A stretch of DNA of 64,000 nt from the IMG/VR virus record IMGVR_UViG_3300020473_000011, positions 124,001-188,000 of that record. The stretch is one strand, 5' to 3'. A model generated the notes under the pieces. The model did no database searches. It was not told the origin of the DNA and saw only the letters and a list, made by a program, of their open reading frames with translations. Below, piece by piece: positions 761 to 38,257 of this stretch. The position numbers and the translations under genes were made by a program. The first letter of the stretch is position 1; every line of letters starts with the position of its first letter.

Positions 761-929
761 CTTTTGGGTCTGACCCGAGGACAGACAGGTCAGCACCATT
801 AGGCTGTGCTACTTGGGTTACTGCAAGTTGTACTCTGTAATGTACAAGGCGATGTACAAAGCCGCTGGTTTCTACTTGGATGGGGTGAGCCTGCCCCGAG
901 GTCAGACGGGGCAAAAGAGGTGAACAGCC

Positions 930-4904: not shown

Positions 4905-4935
4905 TGCGTGGTCACACACCATTGGTGTTGATGTG

Positions 4936-17681: not shown

Positions 17682-17726
17682 AGACACTGAGACACTGAGA
17701 CACTGAGACACTGAGACACTGAGACA
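17682..17726 (+). repeat. Tandem repeat (AGACACTG)x5.6 abutting a start codon
   Basis: Read directly from the sequence; the ATG follows at 17727. Confidence 0.95.
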
Positions 17727-18494
17727 ATGACCGATAAAACTGAGACACCGAAAACTGACCATGAACACGTGCTGACGCTTGTACAGAGCCTCTATAACCG
17801 TGCCTACGCTGACAAGCCTGATGCAGTACCTTTTGAGCCGAGTGATACACTAGCGGGTCTCATTGACCAGTTAGACAATATGCTGGTGGGTGTATTGGAT
17901 GAGCGTGAGGAACTTACCAAGGAGAACAAGCAGCTTCGTAAGAACCAGCTAGACCTCTTTGATTCACTCGATACGTCAAGCCATGAGCTAGCTTCATTAA
18001 TAGAGCACGTCAATAACGAACTAAGTAACAATATCAGTAGTGCCGATACAGAACCGCCTGAGTACCTAGATGCTGAAACCCCGTATAAAGCCTACCACTT
18101 GTTAATGGATATTCTGCCGTTTATCTCTACACATGGCGAAGATACGAACCATCTTGTGGAGCGTATGTATACGCGCCGTACAGCTTCTCACGCTAAACTG
18201 CCAACGCCACTACCAATCCATGACCCTGAAATGTATAAGCGCTGCGCAGAGAAGACGAAGCACGCTATCGACGAGTGGAGGCTACGCATTCATGCACATG
18301 ATCAAACTTACCTAGAAACAACATTGAAGTTCCGTGCGCTGGCCAGTACGCAGCTTCACCTGCTGTACCAACAAATGGCCTGCCCACATAACGACACCCG
18401 TGTGACAGAGTACCCTGACGTGCCCGATAAAACGTTCACGTGCGTTAAGTGTCATGCAAGCTACACCGACAGTGGAGCCACTAGCCATGAGTAA
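17727..18494 (+). CDS. Hypothetical protein (coiled coil, C-terminal Zn-ribbon-like)
   Basis: CPH...CVKC near the C-terminus. Confidence 0.7.
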   Translation: MTDKTETPKTDHEHVLTLVQSLYNRAYADKPDAVPFEPSDTLAGLIDQLDNMLVGVLDEREELTKENKQLRKNQLDLFDSLDTSSHELASLIEHVNNELSNNISSADTEPPEYLDAETPYKAYHLLMDILPFISTHGEDTNHLVERMYTRRTASHAKLPTPLPIHDPEMYKRCAEKTKHAIDEWRLRIHAHDQTYLETTLKFRALASTQLHLLYQQMACPHNDTRVTEYPDVPDKTFTCVKCHASYTDSGATSHE

Positions 18495-19002
18495 CCCGTT
18501 ATCGTCTGAGGGCTGGGGTCTGCTAGCAACGGCGCTGGCAGGTCAACACACCCGTGACAACGAACCTATCACGTTACGCACCAATGCCGTAACGGGTCAA
18601 CCTGTAACCCATTACAAGTGTCAGAACCGCTACCACTATGAAGCCGTTGAAGTCTTTCACACAGGTGACCTTATAACGGGCGAGGCTGTGCTCATTGACC
18701 TGCACAGTCAGAACAGTGACGCTTATAACAAAGCGATGCGCGCTGTAACTGGTGATACCCGTCAAATGAACATCGACTTTTCACCGTACATGCTGACGAA
18801 GTTCCTACAGACGTACTTTGATAACGAACAGCTTGAAGGTGTTCAGATGATTGAATATGCCAACGCCAATGATGGGTACCCTAACTGGTTGCTACGCTGG
18901 CGCGACGATTCGCTACCGAGTGGCCACCAGCGTAAGGTCTGGGTTGACTCGCTGACGTCGATGATACCCAACACCAATGCGCACCCTGTGGAAGTGCTGT
19001 GA
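18454..19002 (+). CDS. Hypothetical protein
   Basis: Likely start at MSNPLS after a GGAG RBS. Confidence 0.65.
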   Translation: MQATPTVEPLAMSNPLSSEGWGLLATALAGQHTRDNEPITLRTNAVTGQPVTHYKCQNRYHYEAVEVFHTGDLITGEAVLIDLHSQNSDAYNKAMRAVTGDTRQMNIDFSPYMLTKFLQTYFDNEQLEGVQMIEYANANDGYPNWLLRWRDDSLPSGHQRKVWVDSLTSMIPNTNAHPVEVL

Positions 19003-19553
19003 TGAGTAAGATTGTGCTAAACAAAGGGTGTCCTATCCTTGAGACGACCCTCAAGCTGCCCAAGCATTCAATTACGCTTGAGATATGTCACCCTGCTACA
19101 GGGAAAGAGTCGCAGCTCTCAGCTCAGCTCACCCACTTAGAACTAAAGCACATCTTTCCCGACTGGGAGGCCGAAGAGCTGCTTGATTATTACTGTGCGT
19201 GGCACCGTAAACCTCAGCCTATTGAGTTCGCCCCTGCCTATGTGATGTATGGGGCACCCGATAGTCGGGGCGTGAGTATTGTGGAAGTACATACGATGTA
19301 CATACAGCGTGAACCCCTCACAGGCGGTGCGCGTCTGGTATTCCCTATCAGTCCGCAGGATGTTACCTACTATCAAAGCCGCCTAGCGAATACCGTAAAG
19401 GCGTTGTTCCCTGAGTTCTATGCAAGGCAATCACTTGATCAGGCCAAGGCCATCATTGCAAAGCTTACAAAGCGTGCACCAACGCCTAGCCTAACCAAAC
19501 CTAAGCCACCACTTAAACGCTTGAGTAACGAGCGCTGGTGGCGTAACCAATAA
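18999..19553 (+). CDS. Hypothetical protein
   Basis: 184-aa coupled ORF. Confidence 0.65.
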   Translation: MMSKIVLNKGCPILETTLKLPKHSITLEICHPATGKESQLSAQLTHLELKHIFPDWEAEELLDYYCAWHRKPQPIEFAPAYVMYGAPDSRGVSIVEVHTMYIQREPLTGGARLVFPISPQDVTYYQSRLANTVKALFPEFYARQSLDQAKAIIAKLTKRAPTPSLTKPKPPLKRLSNERWWRNQ

Positions 19554-19571
19554 ACTAAACGAGACACAGAT

Positions 19572-19988
19572 ATGAGTACTTCAAAACTTACATGGCTTGC
19601 CTTTGCAGGTACCCTCTTTTCAGCAACCCTCTTATCAGGCTGTATTGAGTCTGAGGTTAAGTACGTTGATGTCAGTACTGGGAAACCCGTACTAGTCGAA
19701 AAGCTCACGCCAGTCTATACGGCTAAGAGTAACCCTAAAGCACCTGTTCCCCACACGAGAAGCCCAAGCCGTTACATCACCCGTGATGATGGTAGTGTCG
19801 TATACATAGATAAGTCAGGTGCCCCTCAGTTCAGTGGTCTTGAACGTATCTGTATTGATGGGATTGTGTATATTCGTGGTACCCATGTATTGACCCCTTA
19901 CATGACGGTCGATAAAGGGAACCATCCTTTTCTTGAAGAGAATGACAGTGGCTCGGCTATCAAGCTTAAAGGCGTAACGTGTAACTAA
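19572..19988 (+). CDS. Lipoprotein
   Basis: Lipobox LLSG-C; shares VKYVD.STGK, C.DG..Y and GVTC with 13941..14318. Confidence 0.8.
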   Translation: MSTSKLTWLAFAGTLFSATLLSGCIESEVKYVDVSTGKPVLVEKLTPVYTAKSNPKAPVPHTRSPSRYITRDDGSVVYIDKSGAPQFSGLERICIDGIVYIRGTHVLTPYMTVDKGNHPFLEENDSGSAIKLKGVTCN

Positions 19989-19995
19989 CCCTAGA

Positions 19996-20223
19996 GTGAG
20001 AGCACTGATGAAACGTGAGTATGAATCTATTCAGGTAACGGGGAGCTGTGATTCGGGTTGTGGCCAACCTGCAACACACTGGTTTGGTAACACATCGGCG
20101 GCTACCTGTGCAAAGGCTGAGTGTATTAAGCAGATGGAAGAACGCTATGCTGAGCACTGTGCCGAAATGGATGCCCAGTTTAAGCTTGAAGAAGAAATGC
20201 GGGACATGTACGGCTATGACTAA
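19996..20223 (+). CDS. Small Cys-rich protein
   Basis: CDSGC...C...C pattern. Confidence 0.6.
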   Translation: MRALMKREYESIQVTGSCDSGCGQPATHWFGNTSAATCAKAECIKQMEERYAEHCAEMDAQFKLEEEMRDMYGYD

Positions 20224-20235
20224 AGGCCAGCTCGT

Positions 20236-20688
20236 ATGTTAAAGCCATTAAAGGGCGACTTACTACAGTTTGCTGAGCATGGTTACTTTGATGTGGTCGT
20301 CCATGGGTGTAATTGCTTCTGTGAAATGGGCGCTGGGTTTGCCTATGCAGTAAAGACCCAGTACCCGAAAGCCCATCGGGCAGATAGGCAAACACTCAGG
20401 GGTGATCGTAACAAGCTTGGAACCTATACCAGTGCCAATGTCGGTCACTTTATTATCGTAAATGCGTATACCCAGTATCATTTTGAGGGAGAAGGCCAGC
20501 GTTTTGACTATGATGCTCTTAGAGACGTCATGAAACGCATCAAACAGGACTTTTCTGGTAAACGCATAGGTTACCCTCAAATTGGGGCTGGTTTCGCTGG
20601 TGGATGCTGGCGAGAGGCTTCAAAGATAATAAATAGGGAACTGAGAGGCGAAAAACACGGTGTAGTGGTCTTTCAGCGGCACAGATAG
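20236..20688 (+). CDS. Macrodomain (ADP-ribose processing) protein
   Basis: KGDLL, VVHGCNC...MGAGFA, NAYTQ, PQIGAGFAGG.W motifs. Confidence 0.9.
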   Translation: MLKPLKGDLLQFAEHGYFDVVVHGCNCFCEMGAGFAYAVKTQYPKAHRADRQTLRGDRNKLGTYTSANVGHFIIVNAYTQYHFEGEGQRFDYDALRDVMKRIKQDFSGKRIGYPQIGAGFAGGCWREASKIINRELRGEKHGVVVFQRHR

Positions 20689-20773
20689 CCCTTTTAGTGC
20701 CTTTTAGGGCTGTATAGACGGTGTTTTTCATGTAAAAGCCTGTGTTGCAGCCCTTTTAGTCTAAATTTAATCG

Positions 20774-20802
20774 TTGTACAATGATTTTTAGTGCGCTATA
20801 GT
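20774..20802 (+). promoter_or_regulatory. Sigma70-like promoter TTGTAC-N17-TATAGT
   Basis: The -35 lies inside the ATCGTTGTACAATGAT palindrome; same geometry at 21804, 22197 and 29316 (-). Confidence 0.75.
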
Positions 20803-20848
20803 GCCAAAACGAATCAAACATTCATTATTAACCAAGGGATAGATCACC

Positions 20849-21493
20849 ATGACTGAAAAAGACATGAATGATAGCTGGTTTAGTTATTTCCACAACCAAG
20901 CAACGGCAGCGCCACCAAATGGTACCCGTGTTCTTTATCCGTGGTTACACGGACGTGCTCAAGTAGAGTACACGATAACAGGTGCCCAAGAGCAAGGCGG
21001 CACAACTGCCTACAACATCACGTGCACGCATGTACCACGTGGCGATAGTAGCGCGTCGGTCGGTACACAGTACTCGGTACCACTCAAGTCGCTATACCCT
21101 ATAGACTACCATGACCCAGCTGCGATAGCCGTAGCTGATCAGTCTGCACCTAAAGTAGCGCTTTACCGTGTAATTGATGGTAAGCCCTTTATGCCACTGT
21201 ACTACAAGATAAACCCAACGACCGCGCTTGAGGAACTTGTACTTATTACACCTAACTATGAGTATGAGACCGAAGTCGTCACAATCCCGAATGAAGAACT
21301 TGCTGAGCGCCGCTTAGCTACCCGCTTTGTATGGGGAACGTCTGACGGGGCTGCCATTGCCAGTGCCCGTGCCAAACAAAGCGCCCTTAACGCAATGCAC
21401 GCTAAACGTATTGCTGATGAAGTAGCACGCCAACAAGGTATTGCTGCTGAGTGGATAGCCTCTATTAAAACGGTGAACAACCATGAAGTATGA
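20849..21493 (+). CDS. Hypothetical protein
   Basis: 214-aa ORF downstream of a promoter. Confidence 0.7.
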   Translation: MTEKDMNDSWFSYFHNQATAAPPNGTRVLYPWLHGRAQVEYTITGAQEQGGTTAYNITCTHVPRGDSSASVGTQYSVPLKSLYPIDYHDPAAIAVADQSAPKVALYRVIDGKPFMPLYYKINPTTALEELVLITPNYEYETEVVTIPNEELAERRLATRFVWGTSDGAAIASARAKQSALNAMHAKRIADEVARQQGIAAEWIASIKTVNNHEV

Positions 21494-21737
21494 TAATGCG
21501 GATGCAGTCGCAACTAAAATCGCGGTATCGTCACTGCTGGTGGGTGCAACTAAGAAAGCATTCGACATGGGCTTTGAGCAAATGCTGGCGGGTAAGGGTT
21601 GCATGACACAACAGGTCTTTTTCAGTTCTCTTAACTATGCAGGTCTGCGTAACTACCATAAGAAGACACTGTGGTCGGCCTATAAGTCAGGACGTTTCGA
21701 AGCACAGGTTGCGTTTGACCTTAAAACGAAGGTTTAG
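21483..21737 (+). CDS. Hypothetical protein
   Basis: 84-aa overlapping ORF. Confidence 0.6.
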   Translation: MKYDNADAVATKIAVSSLLVGATKKAFDMGFEQMLAGKGCMTQQVFFSSLNYAGLRNYHKKTLWSAYKSGRFEAQVAFDLKTKV

Positions 21738-21803
21738 CACTGGCCTGCTCTACTGCGTGCGTCGTTAATCACTACGGCGCAGCACTTTTCTTTAAAATAA
21801 TCG

Positions 21804-21832
21804 TTGTACAATGATTGTGTTTCAGCTATAGT
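21804..21832 (+). promoter_or_regulatory. Sigma70-like promoter TTGTAC-N17-TATAGT
   Basis: Read directly from the sequence. Confidence 0.75.
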
Positions 21833-21870
21833 GACCCTAAATCACTAATAATTACCGTAGGAACACTACC

Positions 21871-22041
21871 ATGCACATCGTTAGAGCCTTTGAAGAAGCA
21901 ACTAAGAGCCGTGACGCACTTGTCAGCAAGTTAACTAAGTTATCAATGGACGCTGCTGCGGCTGGCAACAAGGAACTACTCGACACATACCAAGAACTTA
22001 TCAAAGATGCGAACGCTATCATTGCGCCGTTCACTGAGTAG
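21871..22041 (+). CDS. 56-aa helical protein
   Basis: Not in the track. MHIVRAFEEATKSRDALVSKLTKLSMD...PFTE with its own promoter, AGGA RBS and a terminator at about 22064-22091. Confidence 0.7.
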   Translation: MHIVRAFEEATKSRDALVSKLTKLSMDAAAAGNKELLDTYQELIKDANAIIAPFTE

Positions 22042-22196
22042 TTAAGGCACCTAATAGCATAGAGAGGCGGGCACAAGTTGCTCGCCTTTTTGGTTTTAGG
22101 CCACCAGCACCTAGGCTTATACTAGGTAACTACTGAATAACCACCCTATTTTCACCTAATCCCCTGTCCCGCAGTTATTTATATCGAATAAAATCG

Positions 22197-22225
22197 TTGT
22201 ACAATGATTTATAAGCTGGTATAGT
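22197..22225 (+). promoter_or_regulatory. Sigma70-like promoter TTGTAC-N17-TATAGT
   Basis: Read directly from the sequence. Confidence 0.75.
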
Positions 22226-22264
22226 GGTCTCAAGTTAAGAATTGAACTACAGAGACCACTAGCA

Positions 22265-22633
22265 ATGATAAACCTTATTCCTACAGCACTAACAGTATTT
22301 GGCCGTGAAGCCGTACAAGCCCGTATCAAAGCAGGTGAGCGTCCTTCGGATATTCAGTTAGACGCGTTTGATCAACGCGATGCTACAATAAAAGCTTTGT
22401 TTGAGGCTATCGAATCTAACTTACCAAAGGGCACTTACTGTTCTGAGGCTGACCACCAACTTACCGTTGATGTCCGTAACGGTGAAGATATGGACGCAGC
22501 GCTGGCTAAGTTGAATGAGCTGGTGGAAACACACGGTCAGTTATTCAAGAAGCGCGGTTGTTCTTTCCAGCTCGTTGAGACCTTTGCTAACGTGACGATG
22601 TTTGAACTTAACTACAATAGAGACCACAGCTAA
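22265..22633 (+). CDS. Hypothetical protein
   Basis: 122-aa ORF downstream of a promoter. Confidence 0.7.
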   Translation: MINLIPTALTVFGREAVQARIKAGERPSDIQLDAFDQRDATIKALFEAIESNLPKGTYCSEADHQLTVDVRNGEDMDAALAKLNELVETHGQLFKKRGCSFQLVETFANVTMFELNYNRDHS

Positions 22634-22911
22634 TGACTGAACTATCAAAAGAACTGAATGACCTAGAAGCCTCAGCAAATGAAAAGGCAGAGGCATTCGC
22701 TACCAGTGAGAAGTGGGCAAAGCTTACTAATGGCCAAAAGAACCTACTTGCTTTGCTGGTGGATGCAGGTCAGTACGCAAACATTGAAGATGCAGCCTAT
22801 CAATTACGAACAAGTGTACAGTGGGTTCATCGCCATGCGTTAGGACTATCAGCGCTGGGACTTGCACGCCGTGAACTATCAAGCGGTCAGATCTGGTTAG
22901 CAGGTGCATAA
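22633..22911 (+). CDS. Winged-HTH-like protein
   Basis: LTNGQKNLLALL...IEDAAYQLRTSVQWVHRHALGLSALGLARR. Confidence 0.6.
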   Translation: MTELSKELNDLEASANEKAEAFATSEKWAKLTNGQKNLLALLVDAGQYANIEDAAYQLRTSVQWVHRHALGLSALGLARRELSSGQIWLAGA

Positions 22912-23352
22912 ATGCGTAAGTTGTTCATAGGCGCAGCACTGGCGTCAGTTTCTTTTCTTGGTTATTACAATGTGACCAACTACCAGTATGCGGAGAATAC
23001 CGAGTATGTCGGTACGGTAGTCAGTAAACCCCAGCCTGTGTGGGCGCGTTCAGATAAGCCTCACTATGGGAAGCACTACCATGTGAGCGTCGACTTTAAC
23101 GGCATCGGTGTGCAATCAGTGAATGTACCTTACAAGCAATATACGCAGCTAAAGACAGGTGATGTCTATCGTGTAAAACCGAAGTACTGGCCAGTCGTAG
23201 GTATCTTTAATTTTGAAGGAACACCGCAGGCCGCTGACAACCCTGCCCTTCACAAGACTAACGTACTCTTAATGCTGACGAGCCTACTCGTTCTAATAAT
23301 GGGTGGATTCTTTGTCGGGATATTAGGGCTGTTCAAGTATCTTGAGGACTAG
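22912..23352 (+). CDS. Membrane protein (two TMs flanking a beta domain)
   Basis: N- and C-terminal hydrophobic segments; Y.QLKTGD. Confidence 0.7.
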   Translation: MRKLFIGAALASVSFLGYYNVTNYQYAENTEYVGTVVSKPQPVWARSDKPHYGKHYHVSVDFNGIGVQSVNVPYKQYTQLKTGDVYRVKPKYWPVVGIFNFEGTPQAADNPALHKTNVLLMLTSLLVLIMGGFFVGILGLFKYLED

Positions 23353-23410
23353 CGTTAAGTTCATGTTGGTTATATACTGGCCAAGCTAATTGAGACTTTG
23401 AGGAACTACT

Positions 23411-23755
23411 ATGAGAACACGTGCAGGCCAACTACTGGCTAATATCAAACCACACCTAACCGAGAAAGCTGGTGGCATTATCGCTGACCTTAAAGCCCTC
23501 GGACTTACTATCAGTGATGAAGACACCCATGGCCGTCAGTGGTTCGAGCTTGATGCTGACCATAGACATAACCCTATTCACGATGTATTCCTAAAGAACG
23601 GCTGGCGCTTGACCTTCAATGGTAATGTGGCTGGTGGTGTTAAGCAGGCTGCTTATCAGCATGACGCGTTCGGCGGGGGCAATGCAGTGCTGCACTTTAA
23701 ACAGAATAAGGTCTACTTCCTGACTGTTAACTTTAAGCGTGATTACCGCGACTAA
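23411..23755 (+). CDS. Hypothetical protein (possible internal head protein)
   Basis: GAGGA RBS; N-terminus MRTRAGQLL...LTE. Confidence 0.7.
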   Translation: MRTRAGQLLANIKPHLTEKAGGIIADLKALGLTISDEDTHGRQWFELDADHRHNPIHDVFLKNGWRLTFNGNVAGGVKQAAYQHDAFGGGNAVLHFKQNKVYFLTVNFKRDYRD

Positions 23756-23770
23756 TCCCTTTGCAGAAAT

Positions 23771-23866
23771 AAAAAACCCGCGAATCACTCAAGGCTGGGA
23801 GCCTAAAGGTCGCGGGCATTAACTAACCGCGTTACTGGCCGACCGATAAACTAGCCAGCAACGAGC
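23771..23866 (-). ncRNA. Putative sRNA 3
   Basis: Minus-strand promoter TTGCAG(23899-23894)-N17-TATCAT(23876-23871); 11-bp 5' hairpin with G-U pairs and loop UUUAUCGGU; terminator CCCGCGA...TCGCGGG-TTTTTT. Confidence 0.65.
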
Positions 23867-24125
23867 ACTCATGATACTTCAACGACTTACCCACTGCAAG
23901 CCCCTACCATACTGTATGCGCAATACTTAAACACGTCCCGTAAGTATGTACTAGCGTACTTGCATACCCTTAGCCTAAAGTCCATAACCCTTTTCGACTC
24001 TTTTGTACTATTTCGTAAATGACAACGCTAGCCTAAACTGTTACAGTACAGGGCATTAGGTTGTGGATTAACGTGGGCTGAATTGTCACACTTGTTCACA
24101 GTACGTGAGTTAAAGGGGAACACTG

Positions 24126-24659
24126 GTGGTTCAAAAGCAGCTTCAAGGGTTTATCGAGAGCTTAGCTGACCAGTACAACTGTGACGAAAAAGTCATAGAG
24201 GTCATTGAAACATTTGCGCAGGAATTAACAGGCCAGCAAGTCGCTGACGTTATCAAGAATCTCGCCGAGCGTGACATCGTCGTGCCTGTCGAAATACAGC
24301 GCCCTGAGTGGCAGCGGCAGGTGCTACTAAACCGACAGGGCGCAGTCATCATCAACAATACAGGGCGAGCTATCGCAAGCAGCGCCGACTTATTTGAAGT
24401 CAAAGACTATGCGCACCTCGTTGGCCTGTGTAACGAACTAGGTTTCGAGCATTCGAGCATCACGAATACGCGAATGCTTGAGAGTGAGGCAACGCGCACA
24501 GAAGCGATTGTCTATGAGCTGACCTTCCGCACGGATGGCTACTACCTACTCCAAGGACATGTGTGGGTTCATAGCAACTTCGCAGACCTAGCTGAAAGAC
24601 TTAGCCAGTTCGACCCTCAAAACAACACACTCTTAACCAAAGACGACGGTACCAGCTAG
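24126..24659 (+). CDS. Hypothetical protein
   Basis: 177-aa ORF with an AAGGGG RBS; last gene before the non-coding repeat region. Confidence 0.7.
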   Translation: MVQKQLQGFIESLADQYNCDEKVIEVIETFAQELTGQQVADVIKNLAERDIVVPVEIQRPEWQRQVLLNRQGAVIINNTGRAIASSADLFEVKDYAHLVGLCNELGFEHSSITNTRMLESEATRTEAIVYELTFRTDGYYLLQGHVWVHSNFADLAERLSQFDPQNNTLLTKDDGTS

Positions 24660-26772
24660 GCGTCACGCCTACTTACTAAACCAAACTTGATACCTCTTAG
24701 ATTTACCTGCGTAGCACAGACGTGCTCGCGCGTGTGTCACGTAATCACGCCCACTACAAAGCAAACCCGATCACACTCGCCTCAATAAAGCTAACTATAC
24801 CCGCATGACCTCGGGTCAGAGTGCTAAGCGAACCGCAATTCGTTGTACAACACTTTCGTTTTTATAGTGGTATATACCCTGCCCTGTCCTCGGGTCAGAG
24901 TATAGAGAAGCTTTCGGGTGCCCTTTACGAACTTCCTACTGCCCCACCGATATTAGATAAACGCCTGTTTAAAGGTCACTATAGTGGTTCTTTGGCTTTC
25001 CGTAAGTGACCCGAGGTCACTTAGCTGTGGTAGTGGACTCGTATAAGCAGGTCTTAGTGAACACTGTACAACGTTTTATCTGTCGGATCGTAAGGCTAGC
25101 ACTCGGCTAGCTGCGCCTTCTCGACACTGCGGTTAACTAAGGGGTGCTTGTAATACATGGGGATGTGACCCAAGGTCAGGCTCAAAGGTCGAGGTGAGGG
25201 TCAACAGTCTCACCCAACTGGCAGCGTTGTACAAGCATTGCCTAAACCCCTGCGCCGCAGTGGGCTAATTTTTCGTACCGACGATGTGAGGGTTGAGGCG
25301 ACCGTACGCCAGAAAAACCTTTAATTTCATACAAACTCTATATGTATACGCCTAGACACACTGCAAAAGTAGGCGTCATGGTGTCGGCTGAACGGTTTAT
25401 TTTGGGTTACACACTGCGGCACAGGGGATTTCGTTGAATCAGAGTGTTAGGCAAAGTGAGCTAATACCTTATGTAGCAGGGGTATAGAGTGGAACCATAA
25501 TGACAACCCCTCGCTTCGCTCGGTTTAATCACGGCTTAGTCGCAGCTTTAATTACTAGTTTCCGTCGGTTCAGTAACGTTTTTGATGGCGGTTAGGGTTG
25601 TGCTGTTACTGATATTAGATGTGCATTGGTGCGTAGTCTGCTACTCATTAGTGGTTCTGCTTGTCGATTAGTGAGTAGAGTGTTACTCATAGTGAGAAGC
25701 TATTTGTGCCTATCTATTTACATTAATGGTTCTAGTATTGCTCTCTTGCTGTCTAGTTGTGGTCTTATAGTTGCGTCAGTTAATGGTGCTGGTTTGCATT
25801 CTCTGGTTTTACTTGGCGTTACTGAGTGTCTACTTTGGTTGCAAATATGATGCACGGTTATCGCATTGCTTGTATTGCTTGAGTGTATGTAGTTATGTAT
25901 AGGGGAAATGCAAACAGGGTTTTACTAACTTTCTAGTGTTGCAGTGATATTCCGCAACTGGGTAGTTGAACCTCAGTATAGGAAAAAGTGCGTGTGACCT
26001 CGGGTCATATTGGGGTGTTTTGTGTCTACTTTTGCGATTCTAGACACTGATTTCGGTCTGACCTCGGGTCATGGGTCACTATTTAGCGGTGTATTGTACA
26101 ATGCTTTGGGGTTGTGCCCTCGGGTCAGATAACCTTTAACTATATAGGTTTCTTGCCGAATCTCGGTATAACCGCACTGGCGGCGGCAGGTTAATAACAG
26201 TAGCGATGCCGCTTGTTAGTTCATAGTGTGACGTGGAATGTTTATAGTGAGCTTTATATGTGGTCGTACATTAATAGTAACGTGTATGTATACGTATATA
26301 GAATGAATAGTAGAATGTCTGGAATAGCTTATAGTAATAGGCTTGTATGTATCTATAGAATGTAATGTATATGTGCATACTAATATTATGTATGTGTACA
26401 TGTGTAATATAGTAGATGTAGTTATAGTGTCTATAGTGAGCATAGTGTTGTTCATAGTATTTATGTTCTTACTGAGGCAATGAGTTATCGACTATCCTGT
26501 GCGGGCGCGCAAGTGTTCTTTCTTTTTAGTGGAAGGTGGCTGCTTTCTTGTGTTGGCCTGCCCTCGGGTCAGGGTGCTTGTGGGTGTTCTTTTCGTTGTA
26601 CAATGGATTTTGACTGTCCTGTGCGGGGCGCTGCGGGCTTTTCTCGTATGAAGATGAGTGCTTGTGTGGGTTTTACTTTTTAGATGGCTTGTGGGGCGTC
26701 TGAGGGCGTTTTTACGTTTTTGAGGGGGTGTGGCGACTATCCTGTGCGGCCGCCAAGCGGAAGTAGAGGCGC

Positions 26773-27150
26773 TTAACGCGTCTCTACTGAGTTATTTTCT
26801 TGTTCTTTACTATCTATCTCTTCGAGCAGCGCCTCAAGGTAAGATAGGCGGAACGCAGCGCGTATGTCGTCCATCTTGAAGTCTAGCGCGCATAACTTGG
26901 TGAACAACTCGCGATGCTCGGTTACGAACTCACGTGTTAGCTCAATCGTATTTGAAATCATAGAAAGCACATACCCATCTACTAGTTCTAGATTGTCACC
27001 GATGTGCGTCATTAACTCGGCTTTCTTACCTGTGTTATGTAACGTGGCAATTTCAGTCATAAGTTTCCAGCGCGCTTCGCGTTGCTCTTCTGTTAGTTCC
27101 TGATTAGGCACTGTTATCGTATCGGTCGTCATAGTGTGGTTAGTCTCCAT
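26773..27150 (-). CDS. Hypothetical protein
   Basis: 125-aa ORF, last gene of the minus-strand operon. Confidence 0.65.
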   Translation of the reverse strand: METNHTMTTDTITVPNQELTEEQREARWKLMTEIATLHNTGKKAELMTHIGDNLELVDGYVLSMISNTIELTREFVTEHRELFTKLCALDFKMDDIRAAFRLSYLEALLEEIDSKEQENNSVETR

Positions 27151-27340
27151 GTGTTAGTAGTTCGTTTACGGCTTCTTCGGCAGCTACTATTACGGCGTGT
27201 TCGTTCTGGGTGTATTCATTATCGTACTCGCCGTCTAGGCCGCTTACCCATTCTTGCCATTCCGCTTCCGCAATCTCCTGATCTATCCTGTGCGAGGCGA
27301 AGATGCTTAACCATTTATCTTTGTAGTTACTTACGTGCAT
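27140..27340 (-). CDS. Small acidic hypothetical protein
   Basis: 66 aa, AAGG RBS. Confidence 0.6.
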   Translation of the reverse strand: MHVSNYKDKWLSIFASHRIDQEIAEAEWQEWVSGLDGEYDNEYTQNEHAVIVAAEEAVNELLTHGD

Positions 27341-27342
27341 TG

Positions 27343-27642
27343 TTACGCTACCTTACCCGTTTGAATATACGCGTCGATGGCTTCTTGTTGAGTCTTGGCG
27401 CAACAGCCTTCACCCATACCGATTATCTCGCGCATCGCCTCTGATTCGCCTAACGTACAATAGTGGTTATCACCGTCAGTCTTTAATAAAGAGCAGGGCG
27501 CTGTTGTTTGGCCAGTTACGGTCTTACCGACTGAGCATACTTCCGTTAAGCAGCAATACCCGCAGTGATTACAGGCTTGACCATATTTAGGCTTGCGCTC
27601 GACGGCGACCGTCATGACTTTAATTAAGTTACCTTTAAACAT
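27343..27642 (-). CDS. CxxCxxCC (YkgJ-like) metal-binding protein
   Basis: CNHCGYCC...PCSLL...YC...GCC. Confidence 0.7.
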   Translation of the reverse strand: MFKGNLIKVMTVAVERKPKYGQACNHCGYCCLTEVCSVGKTVTGQTTAPCSLLKTDGDNHYCTLGESEAMREIIGMGEGCCAKTQQEAIDAYIQTGKVA

Positions 27643-27662
27643 GAGTCTGTCCTCGGGTCAGA

Positions 27663-27932
27663 TTATTTAAGTGGGGTGGCTGAGAAGATTGGCTCGTACT
27701 CACGCTCTACTGTAAAGATACCTCGGCTCACACCTGTCGCATCAAAGATTTGAACTGTGCATGGCCAGCTTGCTTCATGGCCGTCATTGTCGTGATAGTG
27801 TTCTGCTGCGGCCTCTGCTACATACTGTGGGTACTCTTCAATATCCCAGTGTGTTAGGAAGCTGTCATCAGGCTCGTGATCGGGTTTGTCATTGTAGGGG
27901 ATGCTAAAGCCATATTTGTTTTCGTTGCTCAT
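27663..27932 (-). CDS. Acidic hypothetical protein
   Basis: 89 aa, AAGGA RBS. Confidence 0.65.
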   Translation of the reverse strand: MSNENKYGFSIPYNDKPDHEPDDSFLTHWDIEEYPQYVAEAAAEHYHDNDGHEASWPCTVQIFDATGVSRGIFTVEREYEPIFSATPLK

Positions 27933-28073
27933 TGTCTTCCTTTCTCTCTGACCTCGGGTCAGATTATTTATGACTGTCCTGTGCGGGGCGCTATCTCTTG
28001 GCGTCTGCCCTTGGGTCAGACCAGTCTAGTTTCGATTAGGGAGTTTGACCCGTCTGTCCTCGGGTCAGAGTAT

Positions 28074-28307
28074 TTACTTGATGTACTGCCTGATATGGCC
28101 GTCTTTGCACAGGGCTGTTAGATTACCCAGTTCGTCGAAGGCAAAGGCATGTACTTCAACACCAGCGCCTTCCTTACTATCTTGCTTGGTGATTTTACCA
28201 CCGCGAAGGTGTCTAGCCTTTAAGTAGGTTGCCAGCTTTTTGTCACTTACCCATTTCTCATCAAGCCCTTGTAGCGCTTCCTCAATTACCTGTGCTGTTA
28301 CTTTCAT
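28074..28307 (-). CDS. Hypothetical protein
   Basis: 77 aa, AAGGA RBS. Confidence 0.65.
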   Translation of the reverse strand: MKVTAQVIEEALQGLDEKWVSDKKLATYLKARHLRGGKITKQDSKEGAGVEVHAFAFDELGNLTALCKDGHIRQYIK

Positions 28308-28350
28308 AATCCTTAACCTATCTACTTAGAGTTAGATGCCTGCCCTCGGG

Positions 28351-28842
28351 TCAGACCGACTGTCCTGTGCGGGCGGCGCGTTGCGCTTTACTTCGTTGTA
28401 CAATGTTTCTTAGTGGGTCACGTAAGTCTATGACTACAGGGGCAAACTCGATGCACTCGAAGTCATGTACCCACTGTACGTTATCACCTAAATCAAGAGT
28501 GGCCTGTGTACGTTTTGCAACGACACTCACAAGATTCTTTGCATGGTCAGCATCTAAGTCCACATAATGGCCAAAGAAGCCGTCCTTTTCTATGCGGCCT
28601 GTGTAGGCTATGTAGTACTTGCCCGCAGTCTCCGCCATTTCGCGAACAGTGACAGTCCCGACTTCAACCAGTGTAAAGGTACCTATAGGGAAACTTGGGC
28701 GGTCAAATTCATCACTCGATACATCTTTAGGCACAAGTGCTCTATAAGTCTGACCCGCGTGGCACCGCGCAAACTCTTCATCGAAAAGTGCAGAGAGTAG
28801 CCGCCTGTCATCAGTGACCTTAATAACGGTTATCGTAGACAT
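28351..28842 (-). CDS. Hypothetical protein (paralog of 28870..29340)
   Basis: TITVIKVTDD...HAGQTYRA...FPIGTF vs TITHIKVTSD...HAGKTYRA...FPVGTF. Confidence 0.75.
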   Translation of the reverse strand: MSTITVIKVTDDRRLLSALFDEEFARCHAGQTYRALVPKDVSSDEFDRPSFPIGTFTLVEVGTVTVREMAETAGKYYIAYTGRIEKDGFFGHYVDLDADHAKNLVSVVAKRTQATLDLGDNVQWVHDFECIEFAPVVIDLRDPLRNIVQRSKAQRAARTGQSV

Positions 28843-28869
28843 GTGGTGTTATTCCTCTAGTGGACGCTA

Positions 28870-29253
28870 TTAACAAAACCAAGCAGGGGCGTACGCGTTT
28901 TCCCAGACAATTGCTGAGTTAGTTTCGCCCGCCACATCAACAGCAATCTCAAAGGCGTCAACACCCTCAAGCTCGTCAGTCTGGTCACTGAAACCAAAGT
29001 CGTCGGCGCTGCCTTCGAATGACACTTCGTAAAGCTCTTCTTCGTCGTGCATTTCAGTGATGATCACCTTACCTGTCGAAAGGTCTTCGAAAGTACCCAC
29101 TGGGAACTTAACTGTTGAGCACTCAGCCCAACCATCGTTTAAAACGGCACGGTACGTCTTACCTGCATGCTGTTCAGCGTAAGTAGCATCCCATACACGG
29201 GTTAAGGCTTCTTTGTCACTGGTTACCTTGATGTGGGTAATTGTTTTGTACAT
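28870..29253 (-). CDS. Hypothetical protein (paralog of 28351..28842)
   Basis: Start placed at MYKTIT because the TTGTAC-N17-TATAGT promoter lies at 29316-29288. Confidence 0.7.
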   Translation of the reverse strand: MYKTITHIKVTSDKEALTRVWDATYAEQHAGKTYRAVLNDGWAECSTVKFPVGTFEDLSTGKVIITEMHDEEELYEVSFEGSADDFGFSDQTDELEGVDAFEIAVDVAGETNSAIVWENAYAPAWFC

Positions 29254-29433
29254 AGTGTCGGTCTCATTTATATCGGTTAATGAGGCCACTATAGCAGCTT
29301 GATAATCGTTGTACAACGTTTTTATTTGGTTTAATTCCACTGTGGGGCAGGGGTTTTCGTGACTGTCCTGTGCGGGGCGCAGTAGGGCTGAATGTCAATG
29401 GTGCAGGCTGTCTGACCCGCACTCATTTTTTAT

Positions 29434-34415: not shown

Positions 34416-35501
34416 CTAGGGGGCGAGAACTATAGCAAGGTTCTTCATCAATTTCCAGCTGATTAACGACGGAATCCCGCTGCAACGCTCGTATTGTGAC
34501 TTGATTGGCGTCTCATTATCAAAGCCCCATGTATCGGGTACCGTTTGCAGGCGCAGACTCTCGCGAACAGTGAAGCGACGGCTTGACCCATCAGACATAC
34601 GCATGATCTGTGCAGCGTTCTTACCCATCGGACTCGACATAATGGTGCGTGATGGACGGTCTTTGCTGATCACAGACAGGAACGTCGTGCGGCCACCCGA
34701 TGAATAGTAGGCTCCAAGCATGAAGTCTTTTTGGTCTTGTTCAGGTAGATTACGCCAGTTACCACCTTCGGGAACCTTATGTACAAACGGTTTCTCATCG
34801 TTACGCAGTGTCCATTTCTCGTGGTACTCATGGTTATTGTGACCGTCGGGCGTCTCAGGTAAACCTTTTAGTGCATCGGCCAGCGTGAATTGCACAGGGC
34901 TTTTCTCTGGGAACTGGAACTCACCCTCAAGGTCTTTACGTACCCCAACGATAAAGACGCGCTCTCGGCGCTGGGGCACACCATACTCGGAGCAATCAAT
35001 AACTTGCCACTTAACTTTGAACTCGGTAGACAGGCGCTCAATCATTTCCTCAAAGAAAGGCATATTCTTGCGGTCAACGAGACCACGCACGTTTTCTATT
35101 AGGAACCCTTTAGGCTTCTTGTATAGGTAGCAATCAACGAGTAGTTCAGCAAGGTTACCATTCTTTTCGCAAGCAGCGCCGTTACCCTCTCCTGATCGTG
35201 ACCATGGTTTACAGGGGAATCCGCCTGTGTAGACGTCAGCATCAGGGATGTCGTCAAAGTTAAGTGTCTTTGCATTGAGTACAACGGCAACGTTGGCAAT
35301 GTTCTTGTTAAAGTTACGTACGGCGTGTTTGTTATTATCAAAGGCGAAGATTGTTTCAAAGCCTGCGTACTCTGTCCCAATTGCCCCCACACCTGCACCG
35401 CAGTAGAAGTCCACAACTGTTAACCCGTTCTTTGGTAACTGGGTCATTTGCTCACCATTAGGGCAGCCGTGCAGCTGCGCCTCGTGCACATAATTGTTCA
35501 T
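34416..35501 (-). CDS. C5-cytosine DNA methyltransferase (orphan)
   Basis: Motif I DFYCGAG, IV GGFPC, VI ENV, VIII PQRRERVF, IX RRFTVRE..RLQ. Confidence 0.95.
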   Translation of the reverse strand: MNNYVHEAQLHGCPNGEQMTQLPKNGLTVVDFYCGAGVGAIGTEYAGFETIFAFDNNKHAVRNFNKNIANVAVVLNAKTLNFDDIPDADVYTGGFPCKPWSRSGEGNGAACEKNGNLAELLVDCYLYKKPKGFLIENVRGLVDRKNMPFFEEMIERLSTEFKVKWQVIDCSEYGVPQRRERVFIVGVRKDLEGEFQFPEKSPVQFTLADALKGLPETPDGHNNHEYHEKWTLRNDEKPFVHKVPEGGNWRNLPEQDQKDFMLGAYYSSGGRTTFLSVISKDRPSRTIMSSPMGKNAAQIMRMSDGSSRRFTVRESLRLQTVPDTWGFDNETPIKSQYERCSGIPSLISWKLMKNLAIVLAP

Positions 35502-35834: not shown

Positions 35835-36713
35835 ATGACACACGCAATGAACCCCGAAAATTTGGGGTTGTTAAAGAAGACCCTCGATTCGCTGCCCGAT
35901 GGCGTGCTGGTCGTTTCTCCTGACCGAAAAATTGTTTATGCGAATGACCGATTTATCGCTATGTGGGGGATCCCAAGCACCGTCATGGGGACTCATGACG
36001 ACAGCAAGATACTTGATTATGTTGAGGCGCAGGTCACTGACCTTGAGACTTTCCGAAAGCAGGTAGAGGATTTATACGAGACACGCCGCGAAACAGAAGA
36101 TGAGATCCATCTTACTGATGGCCGTGTTTTTCTCCGCCGAGGGACGTACCACGTTAATGCTGAGGGTGAGACCGCCCACATTTGGGTGTTCTCCGATATA
36201 ACCAGCCTAAAAGCATTTGAGCGCTGTTCGCTTACTGGCGTATTTAACCGCCGTAAGTTCGATGAAGAGTTCGGCTTGCGCCTGCTTGGCATGACAGACA
36301 AGGATATTATTGGCGTAGCGCTACTAGACCTTGATAACTTCAAGCAGTACAACGACAGCTATGGCCACCAGCAAGGCGACCGCTTACTTTCAGAGGTTGG
36401 ACGCTTGTTCCTTGGACGCCTACGTCGTAGAGGCGACACAGCTTATCGTATTGGGGGAGAAGAGTTCCTACTAGTCTGTAAGTGCCGCACTGAGCAACAC
36501 CTGTTTGATTTCATTGATTCAATACGCGCTGATGTTCAGCGCCTTGGCCGTGAGCATGAGAAGAACGCACCTTATAATGTCGTGACCTTTTCGGCAGGCG
36601 TTGGTTTCATACAGGGCAGCGCGAAGGCTGACTACGTGTTTGCCCAAGTAGATAAGGCGCTCTACGCGGCAAAAGAAAAAGGCCGCAACCAACTCGTAAG
36701 GGCTAAGATTTAG
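35835..36713 (+). CDS. PAS-GGDEF diguanylate cyclase
   Basis: PAS domain (LDSLPDGVLVV...YANDRF..MWG), LTGVFNRR, DLDNFKQYNDSYGHQQGD, RxxD I-site (RRGD) and GGEEF active site. Confidence 0.95.
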   Translation: MTHAMNPENLGLLKKTLDSLPDGVLVVSPDRKIVYANDRFIAMWGIPSTVMGTHDDSKILDYVEAQVTDLETFRKQVEDLYETRRETEDEIHLTDGRVFLRRGTYHVNAEGETAHIWVFSDITSLKAFERCSLTGVFNRRKFDEEFGLRLLGMTDKDIIGVALLDLDNFKQYNDSYGHQQGDRLLSEVGRLFLGRLRRRGDTAYRIGGEEFLLVCKCRTEQHLFDFIDSIRADVQRLGREHEKNAPYNVVTFSAGVGFIQGSAKADYVFAQVDKALYAAKEKGRNQLVRAKI

Positions 36714-37344: not shown

Positions 37345-37355
37345 AGTACAGCTCC

Positions 37356-37781: not shown

Positions 37782-37790
37782 AAGGTACCC

Positions 37791-38228: not shown

Positions 38229-38257
38229 AGTTAGTGTCCTTATCGGTTAGTTAATTT

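What the first reader, a model, noticed from the sequence alone, without database searches (positions are those of the whole stretch)
24660..28400. Centromere-like cluster of TGACC-TCG-GGTCA palindromes at the transcription convergence point
Seen: 13 copies of a 13-bp imperfect palindrome within 3.6 kb, densest in a ~2-kb gene-free region where the + and - gene blocks converge. They continue into short intergenic gaps and even supply a stop codon (28351). The only other copies I noticed are two between higB and hipA (771, 892). Inference: parS/tubC-like partition sites, a nucleoprotein scaffold, or packaging/recombination signals of a phage-plasmid. No cognate protein is identifiable here; 24126..24659 is the adjacent candidate.
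Basis: partly seen in the sequence, partly recalled or inferred. Interest (0 to 1): 0.7.

Follow-up and report, generated by a model that had tools for sequence, protein, structure and literature searches.

The report
Replication-initiator binding-site cluster in megaphage
Thirteen copies of a conserved 15-bp palindrome fill the largest gene-free stretch of an uncultured ~420-kb marine phage, and because the same kind of palindrome sits in front of the phage's plasmid-type replication gene here and in relatives, the cluster is most likely a replication origin or copy-control locus, not a demonstrated centromere.

Summary
Thirteen copies of CTG-N-CC-TCG-GGTCAG lie in window 24805-28354, against about 0.6 expected. 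Eight of them lie in the largest ORF-free gap of the 281.5-kb record.

The record is 67% of a ~420-kb marine myophage. Between strains about 10% diverged, the 14 fixed bases change in 1 of 126 positions, against 10% in neighbouring non-coding DNA (p=7e-5). The fourth base is free. Mismatched copies fold no better than shuffles. So the sequence is under selection, not a hairpin: this is a duplex site for a dimeric protein.

A 202.5-kb circular relative in Pseudoalteromonas umbrosa B95 has unalignable DNA at this spot. It still carries 10 or more such palindromes, plus tandem arrays of the half-site, in an ORF-poor region at the syntenic position.

In both genomes 2-3 further copies lie about 0.55 kb upstream of a conserved 548-aa protein with a primase-polymerase domain and an HTH. 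Its homologues include Pseudoalteromonas plasmid replication proteins. Three more distant orthologues carry 3-5 dyads of the same 6-3-6 geometry upstream, with different arm sequences.

Best reading: initiator-binding sites forming an origin or copy-control locus. A partition role is untested. B95 has a ParA gene 42 kb away, and no ParA, ParB or tubulin gene is in the held 281 kb.

The parts
24660..26772 (.). ORF-free region at the convergence of the + and - gene blocks. It is the largest gene-free gap of the 281.5-kb record.
24805..24819 (+). A site 1 (ATGACC-TCG-GGTCAG), followed after 23 nt by TTGTACAA
24884..24898 (+). A site 2 (CTGTCC-TCG-GGTCAG). A 5-nt duplication lies beside it in strains L135 and L136.
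25006..25020 (-). A site 3, a perfect palindrome GTGACC-CGA-GGTCAC. Its spacer is inverted (TCG) in strains L135 and L136.
25165..25179 (-). A site 4 (GTGACC-CAA-GGTCAG)
25994..26008 (+). A site 5, a weak copy ending in CAT. It is the only site with a core change in L135.
26058..26072 (+). A site 6
26114..26128 (+). A site 7. Its free 4th base is C here and A in L135.
26239..26488 (.). AT-rich segment of 29% GC, the second lowest 250-bp window of the record, with degenerate ATAGTR repeats. It starts 110 nt after the triple of sites 5-7 and is a candidate unwinding element.
26558..26572 (+). A site 8, followed by TTGTACAA (26596) and B motif (26612)
27647..27661 (+). A site 9. It fills the 20-nt gap between ORFs 27663-27932 and 27343-27642.
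27948..27962 (+). A site 10, a perfect 7-bp-arm palindrome, followed by B motif 27972
28005..28019 (+). A site 11 (spacer TTG)
28054..28068 (+). A site 12, 5 nt from the stop of ORF 28074-28307
28340..28354 (+). A site 13. It overlaps the stop codon of ORF 28351-28842, and mosaic breakpoints lie beside it in several strains.
770..784 (-). Outlying A site downstream of hipA
891..905 (-). Outlying A-like site (GGGGCAG arm) 24 nt after the hipA stop
26490..29375 (+). Span holding six copies of a second conserved motif B, GACTRTCCTGTGCGG, at 26490, 26612, 26735, 27972, 28358 and 29361. All are in + orientation, and 1 of 75 bases is changed in L135.
24843..28403 (.). TTGTACAA palindromes interleaved with the A sites, at 24843, 25227, 26094, 26596 and 28396, with the variant CTGTACAA at 25065. 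Several lie 21-23 nt after an A site.
25249..25275 (+). Terminator-like hairpin plus T-run that probably ends + strand transcription. Metatranscriptome contigs stop at 25134.
26600..26745 (-). On the - strand this would be a C-rich, G-poor, unstructured RNA (rut-like). The - strand RNA contigs end at 26627.

Best explanation
The motif is a 15-bp dyad-symmetric site, [C/G]TG-N-CC, a 3-bp spacer, then GG-N-CA[G/C]. A dimeric sequence-specific protein reads it as duplex DNA.

The most likely reader is the phage's plasmid-type replication initiator, or a protein tightly linked to its gene. This initiator is a 548-aa protein with an archaeo-eukaryotic primase-polymerase domain and a C-terminal HTH. 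It is encoded outside the window at genome 29473-31119.

Two or three sites about 0.55 kb upstream of that gene would act as its operator or a rep-proximal origin. The 13-site cluster, in the transcriptionally silent, AT-rich, ORF-free region at the convergence point, would be either the origin proper or a distal copy-control locus. A control locus would work by titration or handcuffing, as iteron clusters such as P1 incA or F incC do.

Shown:
- the sites exist, are clustered, and are under purifying selection as sequence;
- the locus and the rep-upstream sites are conserved in position in a relative whose DNA cannot be aligned;
- the arm sequence of the dyads co-varies with the rep orthologue;
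- the rep protein carries primase-polymerase and HTH signatures and has plasmid homologues.

Inferred:
- that Rep itself binds the sites;
- that the cluster initiates or controls replication.
For: 1. Selection acts on sequence, not on structure.
- Against strain L135, in the diverged part, 1 of 126 core bases is changed against 132 of 1320 in other non-coding DNA (Fisher p=7e-5).
- The 4th base is changed in 3 of 9 sites.
- In more diverged strains the flanks of site 27647 are riddled with changes, while the core keeps all bases but the 4th.
- Mismatched copies fold at -2 to -3 kcal/mol, no better than shuffles.
- Orientation relative to transcription is inconsistent: sense after hipA and upstream of the gene at 28.7 kb, antisense within the - strand block.

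2. The locus is conserved.
- The circular 202.5-kb element of P. umbrosa B95 has a tail sheath 86% identical and is collinear over about 90 kb.
- At the syntenic spot it has a 4.2-kb ORF-poor region with 10 or more GTGMCC-N3-GGKCAC palindromes in both orientations, plus tandem arrays that contain the half-site.
- The DNA there cannot be aligned to the window.
- The rest of the 6.2-Mb assembly has one match, as chance predicts.

3. There is a link to rep.
- G000 has 2 sites 516-582 nt upstream of the 548-aa gene. B95 has 3 sites 530-640 nt upstream of its 50%-identical orthologue, although the divergent neighbour gene differs.
- Orthologues at 37-42% identity carry 3-5 dyads of the same 6-3-6 geometry, 0.2-0.7 kb upstream, with other arm sequences: CCCTCA, GTCTCA and GTCTCC.

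4. The rep gene has a replication-protein identity.
- ESM-Atlas feature score is 0.96, with 199-206 shared features, to 'Replication protein' clusters carrying HTH, PriCT or RepB_primase domains.
- Homologues lie on plasmid CP072685.1 and on a P. citrea 'Replication protein'.
- A profile matches a TetR-type HTH (1.4e-5) and a PrimPol AEP domain (0.006) in the PDB.
- DNA_primase_S and HTH_7 match several family members.
- The invariant motif TGSGG-H-LYW, an invariant ID and the conserved MRLPGS-H-KTGR block fit my recollection of AEP motifs.

5. The locus has an origin-like anatomy.
- It is the largest ORF-free gap of the record.
- A triple of sites lies next to the second most AT-rich 250 bp of the record.
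- No metatranscriptome contig covers 25169-26504, while DNA runs do cover it.
Against: - No binding data exist, and the only complex prediction was not folded.
- The dyads upstream of rep could be operators of another, linked regulator.
- The cluster lies 120 kb from rep in this genome.
- Five sites sit in short intercistronic gaps of small - strand genes and two sit downstream of hipA. These are odd places for origin sites.
- GC skew gives no consistent sign. The cumulative maximum is at the cluster in G000, but the minimum in B95 is beside rep, 10-14 kb from its cluster.
- Other origin-like features exist. The record's only two perfect DnaA boxes lie at window 5726 and 5856. An array of about 18 AAAAGACGACTGCA repeats lies at genome 84.5-87.6 kb. 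A 15-bp tandem array lies at the contig start.
- The two Pseudoalteromonas plasmid homologues show no 6-3-6 dyads in the short upstream stretch that could be read.
- The absence of RNA rests on assembled contigs from one sample.
Confidence: 0.45

Rival explanations
1. Operators of a phage transcription regulator. A dimeric repressor or activator binds the dyads to control the rep promoter and the small early-type genes, and to insulate the convergence zone. Together with motif B and TTGTACAA they would form short regulatory cassettes that also act as recombination joints, like PeSL cassettes of T4-type phages.
For: - Sites lie in intercistronic gaps and 5-33 nt before start codons of three small ORFs.
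- A, B and TTGTACAA occur in variable orders (A-T, A-T-B, A-B-T) and all three are conserved.
- Mosaic breakpoints and indels lie beside sites 24884, 28340 and near TTGTACAA 28396.
- The block to the right is plastic, with gene gain and loss between strains.
- The PeSL concept is described in PMC4122927.
- Covariation with rep would also arise for a linked regulator.
Against: - A regulator does not explain a conserved 2-4 kb ORF-free, silent, AT-rich region in a genome that is 89% coding.
- No sigma-70-type -10 element sits at a fixed distance from the sites.
- Orientation is opposite to the genes on the right side, unlike PeSLs.
- No regulator gene was identified. The flanking ORFs have no domains.
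Confidence: 0.22
2. Partition centromere. The dyads and the half-site arrays would be bound by a centromere-binding protein and moved by a ParA-type ATPase, so that the phage is kept as a plasmid.
For: - The relative is a circular replicon in a cultured bacterium and encodes a 394-aa ParA-family ATPase.
- The phage carries a plasmid-type rep, hipA and tyrosine recombinases.
- Many palindromes plus tandem arrays in an ORF-free region resemble centromeres.
- Dispersed palindromic centromere sites are known in the plasmid-prophage N15 (from memory).
Against: - No ParB_N, CbiA or AAA_31, or tubulin gene is in the held 281 kb; the StbA_N (ParM) search also found nothing, but its control was uninformative.
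- The B95 ParA has no homologue in the held 281 kb.
- In B95 the ParA gene lies 42 kb from the sites, the gene after it has no ParB domain, and no ParB_N gene is on the element.
- The motif tracks rep, not parA.
- Spacing is irregular, unlike known plasmid centromere arrays.
- One third of this genome could not be searched.
Confidence: 0.13
3. RNA-level hairpins: terminators, processing or stabilising stem-loops, or translational operators in the early transcripts.
For: - Three sites lie 0-5 nt after stop codons of - strand ORFs, and one covers a GAGG Shine-Dalgarno-like sequence.
- Perfect copies fold at -5.5 kcal/mol, z about -4.
- A few copies are scored terminator-like on the + strand.
Against: - Eight of 13 copies carry a mismatch that is not compensated on either strand, and they fold no better than shuffles.
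- In B95 both arms vary independently.
- Orientation relative to transcription is inconsistent.
- Copies in the stretch without RNA contigs are still conserved.
- There is no U-tract on the - strand.
- Rfam finds nothing.
Confidence: 0.05
4. Another DNA-level role: packaging (pac) sites, an injection-stop signal, a replication terminus, or a selfish palindromic repeat spread by recombination.
For: - The convergence point and the cumulative GC-skew maximum fall at 151 kb.
- Orientation is nearly uniform in this genome.
- Spacer flips and small duplications occur at sites.
- The ORF next to the 15-bp array has a weak match to a terminase-small-subunit N-terminal HTH.
Against: - Orientation is mixed in B95.
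- Strong purifying selection and positional conservation argue against a selfish repeat.
- No read-level data are available to locate genome ends.
- Nothing links the sites to terminase.
Confidence: 0.1

Closest known systems
Initiator-binding repeats of plasmid and phage replicons, with a second control cluster (P1 oriR/incA, F ori2/incC, R6K; from established knowledge)
   Same: Multiple copies of a short specific site occur both next to the initiator gene and in a separate larger cluster. An AT-rich segment lies beside the sites. The site sequence co-varies with the initiator orthologue. Inverted-repeat versions lie in front of rep, as in autoregulated Rep genes.
   Different: The sites are 6-3-6 inverted dyads, not 17-22-bp direct iterons. 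Spacing is irregular, from 49 to 1089 bp. The large cluster is 120 kb from rep and extends into intercistronic gaps. The initiator is of the primase-polymerase plus HTH type. Binding and origin activity are not shown.
Primase-polymerase (AEP) replication proteins of plasmids and phages (PrimPol AEP domain PDB 6zp9; PriCT and RepB_primase families)
   Same: The 548-aa protein family has the TGSGG-H-LYW motif, an invariant ID and the conserved RLPGS-H-K block. It shows weak profile matches to PrimPol and PriS, has a C-terminal HTH, and has homologues on Pseudoalteromonas plasmids.
   Different: No match reaches a curated Pfam threshold. Catalysis and origin recognition are untested.
Plasmid-prophage centromeres (ParABS or SopABC; the dispersed inverted repeats of N15, from memory)
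   Same: Palindromic sites are scattered over several kb, partly within gene regions, in a phage that can exist as a circular replicon. The relative has a ParA-family ATPase.
   Different: No ParB-type protein was found. The sites are not next to parA. The motif follows rep.
PeSL promoter-terminator cassettes of T4-type phages (PMC4122927, PMC2839356)
   Same: Short conserved composite motifs lie between small orphan genes in a plastic region, and strain-to-strain indels and mosaic joints lie beside them.
   Different: PeSLs are a stem-loop followed by a sigma-70 early promoter on the gene strand. Here the stem is not conserved as structure, no -10 element follows, and orientation is opposite to the genes.

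Membership tests
Initiator-binding origin or control locus | Repeated specific sites conserved under selection | tested here: met
   13 copies. Core changed at 1 of 126 positions against 10% in the background. Conserved in B95.
Initiator-binding origin or control locus | The same sites are associated with the initiator gene, and site sequence co-varies with the initiator | tested here: met
   2-5 dyads of 6-3-6 geometry lie 0.2-0.7 kb upstream of five orthologues, with lineage-specific arms. Association is shown; binding is not.
Initiator-binding origin or control locus | AT-rich unwinding element beside the sites | tested here: met
   26239-26488 has 29% GC, the second lowest of the record, and starts 110 nt from a triple of sites.
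Initiator-binding origin or control locus | Compositional skew switches at the locus with the sign expected of an origin | tested here: inconclusive
   The cumulative GC-skew maximum is at 151 kb in G000. In B95 the minimum is at 7-9 kb beside rep. One third of the genome is missing.
Initiator-binding origin or control locus | The initiator binds the sites and replication starts or is controlled there | not testable with these tools
   The complex prediction was not folded. This needs EMSA or ChIP and origin mapping.
ParABS-type partition centromere | Cognate ParA and ParB (or ParR/TubR with ParM/TubZ) encoded by the element, usually next to the sites | tested here: not met
   None found in the 281 kb held, though the StbA_N search had no working control. 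B95 has ParA 42 kb away and no ParB_N gene. 33% of this genome is unsearched.
ParABS-type partition centromere | The sites confer stabilisation or incompatibility | not testable with these tools
   Needs a plasmid stability assay.
tubC/TubZRC | Tubulin-like TubZ, and phased 12-bp direct repeats upstream of tubR | tested here: not met
   No tubulin-family match. The repeats are inverted dyads at irregular spacing.
PeSL cassettes | Stem-loop terminator followed by an early sigma-70 promoter on the gene strand | tested here: not met
   No -10 element at the proper distance. The stem is not conserved. Orientation is opposite to the genes.
PeSL cassettes | Association with indels and mosaic joints in plastic regions | tested here: met
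   Joints or indels lie at 24884, at 28307-28340 and at 28433.
Intrinsic terminators or structured RNA | Stable stem kept by compensatory change, plus a U-tract; or a match to a known RNA family | tested here: not met

The most novel reading that the evidence does not exclude
A lineage of jumbo phage-plasmids of marine gammaproteobacteria replicates with a primase-polymerase/HTH initiator that reads 6-3-6 dyads. It keeps a large, positionally conserved, silent 'hub' of these dyads far from rep. The hub would serve at once as origin or copy-control element and as the segregation site used by an orphan ParA. This would be a combined origin-centromere of a kind not described for phages.
Probability: 0.12. 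Interest if true: 0.75.

Novelty: new variant of a known kind. Interest (0 to 1): 0.55.

Why it matters
Replication origins and maintenance elements of jumbo phages and megaphages are almost unknown, and none is known for uncultured marine ones.

This work yields a testable pair, a defined 15-bp site and a candidate primase-polymerase/HTH initiator. It also identifies a cultured carrier, Pseudoalteromonas umbrosa B95, which holds a circular 202.5-kb relative.

If the pairing holds, it would show that a ~420-kb marine phage uses plasmid-type replication control. It would also offer a route to building replicons or genetic tools for this group. Finally, it places the phage's probable host range in or near Pseudoalteromonas.

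Tried and rejected
Searches for relatives that led nowhere:
- Megablast of the region against the phage collection found no match.
- IMG/VR searches with the flanking ORFs and the tail sheath found no relatives.
- Motif scans of viral contigs gave only single chance hits, or none.
- The metagenome scan for two spaced motifs returned unrelated tandem or CRISPR-like arrays, plus one locus with this phage's motif grammar on a 281,411-bp contig, probably the same phage.

Protein and RNA leads that gave nothing:
- The small flanking ORFs have no Pfam family and no Atlas lead.
- No T7-type or N4-type RNA polymerase and no sigma factor was found, so a hairpin-promoter idea was dropped. The T7-type control rang nowhere, so that negative is weak.
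- Rfam found nothing.
- A literature search for the motif returned only primer sequences from animal studies.
- A complex prediction of the HTH protein beside the 15-bp array with an A site was not folded and gives no evidence.

Analyses that could not decide:
- Metatranscriptome contig ends were compared with A and B positions and showed no consistent register.
- GC skew could not tell an origin from a terminus.
- Walking into the missing 138 kb was not possible with the allowed inputs.

Full report
**What the window is**

The window is bases 124001-188000 of a single 281,557-bp IMG/VR virus record with 47.7% GC. CheckV rates the record 67% complete. Contigs of 419.5 kb (ENA) and 416 kb (NCBI) carry the same genes, so the full genome is about 420 kb.

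It is a myophage. It encodes tail-sheath proteins and long blocks of virion-like genes, and most of its proteins are orphans. It occurs in marine metagenomes and metatranscriptomes.

**The observation**

The palindrome is real and far beyond chance.
- Six perfect TGACC-N3-GGTCA copies occur against 0.05 expected.
- Fifteen matches to CCTCGGGTCAG with up to 1 mismatch occur against 0.57 expected.
- Thirteen copies lie between 24805 and 28354.
- Eleven of the record's 15 exact 10-mers lie in this 3.6 kb.
- Only the 3-bp spacing is enriched.

Eight copies lie in window 24660-26772. This is the largest ORF-free gap of the record, and other gene callers also leave it empty. The + block ends at 24659 and the - block at 26773.

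The full element is CTG-N-CC-TCG-GGTCAG. The fourth base takes all four values, and the rest is nearly fixed. Eleven of the 13 copies point the same way.

Two other conserved motifs are interleaved with it:
- Motif B, GACTRTCCTGTGCGG, has six copies, all in + orientation.
- TTGTACAA often follows an A site by 21-23 nt.

**Selection acts on sequence, not structure**

A strain at 94.6% identity (L135) shares a near-identical block up to about 25525 and is about 10% diverged beyond it.

In the diverged part:
- the 14 fixed bases of nine sites changed once in 126 positions;
- other non-coding DNA changed at 132 of 1320 positions (p=7e-5);
- the free base changed in 3 of 9 sites;
- motif B changed at 1 of 75 bases and TTGTACAA at 0 of 24.

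In still more diverged strains the flanks of site 27647 are saturated with changes, while the core keeps everything but the free base.

Perfect copies fold well, at -5.5 kcal/mol. The eight mismatched copies fold no better than shuffled sequence. No mismatch is rescued by G-U pairing on either strand.

Orientation relative to transcription is inconsistent. Copies are sense downstream of hipA and upstream of the gene at genome 28.7 kb, and antisense inside the - strand block. Rfam finds nothing.

One perfect copy has its spacer inverted between strains, CGA against TCG. A dimer on duplex DNA would tolerate that change.

These facts point to a duplex-DNA site for a dimeric protein. They argue against terminators, processing sites and hairpin promoters.

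**Transcription around the locus**

Metatranscriptome contigs cover 24356-24768, 24944-25134, 26627-26920 and the - strand genes. None covers 25169-26504, although DNA runs do cover it.

A canonical terminator-like hairpin lies at 25249-25275. The - strand RNA leaving the last gene would be C-rich, G-poor and unstructured, which is rut-like.

So the centre of the region looks silent. This rests on assembled contigs from one sample. The centre contains the second most AT-rich 250 bp of the record (26239-26488, 29% GC), just after a triple of sites.

**A relative in a cultured bacterium**

The tail sheath finds one relative, at 86% identity, in Pseudoalteromonas umbrosa strain B95, contig NZ_JASJUU010000009.1. 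The contig has a 121-bp exact end overlap, so it is a circular 202.5-kb replicon.

It is collinear with G000 165-281 kb. Directly at the end of that block, at the syntenic position, lies a 4.2-kb ORF-poor region. The DNA there cannot be aligned to the window. It still contains 10 or more palindromes of the form GTG[A/C]CC-N3-GG[T/G]CAC, in both orientations. It also contains several tandem arrays, two of which repeat the half-site: a 14-bp unit with GTGACC and an 8-bp unit with GGTCA.

In the 6.2-Mb assembly the strict pattern occurs 12 times. Eight are in this locus, three are at 9.8 kb on the same element, and one is on a chromosome contig, as chance predicts. The motif therefore belongs to the phage, not the host.

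In G000 a 15-bp tandem array of the half-site, TACTGACCATTGACC in nine copies, lies at the contig start. It ends in a TGACC-TAT-GGTCA palindrome.

**The link to a replication gene**

The three sites at 9.8 kb in B95 lie 530-640 nt upstream of a 551-aa gene. Its 50%-identical orthologue in G000 (genome 29473-31119) has the two outlying sites 28891 and 28943 lying 516-582 nt upstream. The divergent neighbour gene differs between the two genomes.

This protein family has no Pfam match above threshold. Other evidence identifies it as a replication protein:
- Its ESM-Atlas neighbours score 0.96, with about 200 shared features. They are 'Replication protein' clusters with HTH, PriCT, RepB_primase or DUF927 domains.
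- Its homologues include a gene at the record boundary of plasmid CP072685.1 of Pseudoalteromonas sp. SCSIO 43201, and a P. citrea 'Replication protein'.
- An 11-member alignment shows the invariant motif TGSGG-H-LYW, an invariant ID and the conserved MRLPGS-H-KTGR block. These match my recollection of archaeo-eukaryotic primase motifs.
- The profile matches a TetR-type HTH at positions 434-504 (1.4e-5) and a PrimPol AEP domain (0.006) in the PDB.
- Several members match DNA_primase_S or HTH_7 weakly.

Three more distant orthologues (37-42% identity) on other contigs carry 3-5 dyads with the same geometry, 6-bp arms and a 3-bp spacer, 0.2-0.7 kb upstream. Their arms differ: CCCTCA-CGG-TGAGGG, GTCTCA-YGG-TGAGAC and GTCTCC-GSC-GGAGAC.

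Covariation of site and protein across five lineages is what one expects of an initiator and its recognition sequence. A tightly linked regulator would give the same pattern.

**Interpretation**

The best-supported model has three parts:
- The A sites are recognition sites of this initiator.
- The sites upstream of rep act as its operator or a proximal origin.
- The large silent AT-rich cluster is the origin proper or a distal copy-control locus.

I rate this at 0.45, for these reasons:
- Binding is not shown.
- The cluster is 120 kb from rep in this genome.
- Some sites sit in intercistronic gaps.
- GC skew does not decide. The cumulative maximum is at 151 kb here, and the minimum in B95 is beside rep.
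- Other origin-like features exist: two perfect DnaA boxes at window 5726 and 5856, repeat arrays at 84.5-87.6 kb, and the array at the contig start.

A transcription-regulator or cassette reading comes second, at 0.22. The A, B and TTGTACAA modules sit at mosaic joints in a plastic block of small genes, as PeSL cassettes do. That reading does not explain a conserved 2-4 kb silent gap.

**The centromere idea**

The lineage does have a plasmid side: a circular replicon in an isolate, a plasmid-type rep, hipA, tyrosine recombinases, and a 394-aa ParA-family ATPase in B95.

Against a partition role:
- No ParB_N, ParA-type (CbiA, AAA_31) or tubulin gene is in the 281 kb held here; the ParM-family (StbA_N) search also found nothing, but its control rang in no genome, so that negative is weak.
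- The B95 ParA has no homologue in the held 281 kb.
- In B95 the ParA gene lies 42 kb from the sites, and no ParB_N gene is on the element.
- The motif follows rep.

A partition role is therefore possible but unsupported, at 0.13. One third of this genome could not be searched.

**Novelty**

Initiator-site clusters are a known kind of element. Several things appear new:
- a 6-3-6 dyad system tied to a primase-polymerase/HTH initiator in a ~420-kb marine phage;
- a large, positionally conserved distal cluster of these dyads;
- a cultured carrier of a relative.

All of these can be tested directly.

Noticed in passing
whole window, e.g. 20773, 21803, 22196, 29309; genome-wide: The palindrome TTGTACAA, usually aATCGTTGTACAAyGATt, occurs 149 times in 281 kb against about 4 expected. 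Of these, 104 are intergenic, at a median of 85 nt upstream of starts. Only 18 have a TATAGT -10 element at 15-17 nt. The palindrome is equally abundant in all related contigs (GC 41-66%) and lies upstream of the plasmid rep homologues. It is probably the site of a phage-group-specific transcription factor.
   Followed up: partly
genome 1-135 (L001:1-135), outside the window: The record starts inside nine tandem copies of TACTGACCATTGACC, which contain the A half-site and end in TGACC-TAT-GGTCA. An AT-rich stretch follows, then an ORF (415-939) with a weak C-terminal HTH. The ENA contig also starts inside this array, and the NCBI contig appears to run through it.
   Followed up: partly
window 4423-4452 and 4882-4911; genome 84540-87612: A separate repeat family, AAAAGACGACTGCA, has about 18 copies at genome 84.5-87.6 kb, nine of them within 225 bp, and two pairs in the window. 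It looks like another protein-binding array.
   Followed up: no
window 5726-5734 and 5856-5864: The record's only two perfect DnaA boxes lie 130 bp apart, in opposite orientation, in one intergenic region.
   Followed up: no
window 26490-29375: Motif B (GACTRTCCTGTGCGG) has six copies here, all in + orientation, and only two other partial copies in the record (genome 83100 and 83382, - strand). It is conserved between strains. Its function is unknown.
   Followed up: partly
window 25012-25014: The 3-bp spacer of a perfect palindrome is inverted between strains, CGA here and TCG in L135 and L136. This is the signature of a palindrome flip by template switching or gene conversion.
   Followed up: partly
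window 25526 and 28307-28433: These are sharp mosaic boundaries between strains. Window 17726-25525 is nearly identical to L135 and the DNA beyond is about 10% diverged. Window 28326-28525 is hyper-diverged, with replaced segments in several metagenomic strains.
   Followed up: partly
window 930-2249 (-), 35835-36713 (+), 20236-20688 (+), 15446-16321 (+), 34416-35501 (-): The window carries several accessory genes: a HipA-family kinase toxin, a PAS-GGDEF diguanylate cyclase, a Macro-domain protein, a Thg1-like protein and a DNA methyltransferase.
   Followed up: partly
window 56113-59871, 59969-61183, 61206-63860 (-): Three adjacent large proteins belong to the VrlC-like family (phrog_877/5986). 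About 31-32% identical homologues occur in Wolbachia WO and Acidithiobacillus phages.
   Followed up: no
genome 60691-61722 (-), 228128-229399 (-), 6553-8454 (+): Two clear tyrosine recombinases and one weak one are encoded. The weak one is 69% identical to a B95 protein.
   Followed up: no
G001:C26 (L263-L277), 37240-38424: The P. umbrosa B95 relative is a circular 202.5-kb element. About 73 kb of it (32-105 kb) has no counterpart in the held record. That stretch includes a 394-aa ParA-family ATPase followed by a 634-aa orphan.
   Followed up: partly
window 26627-26789: A discrete metatranscriptome contig of about 165 nt, with higher depth than its neighbours, spans from motif B (26612) to a strong hairpin at 26762-26788. 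It may be a small RNA or a stable 3' UTR fragment. The strand is unknown.
   Followed up: no
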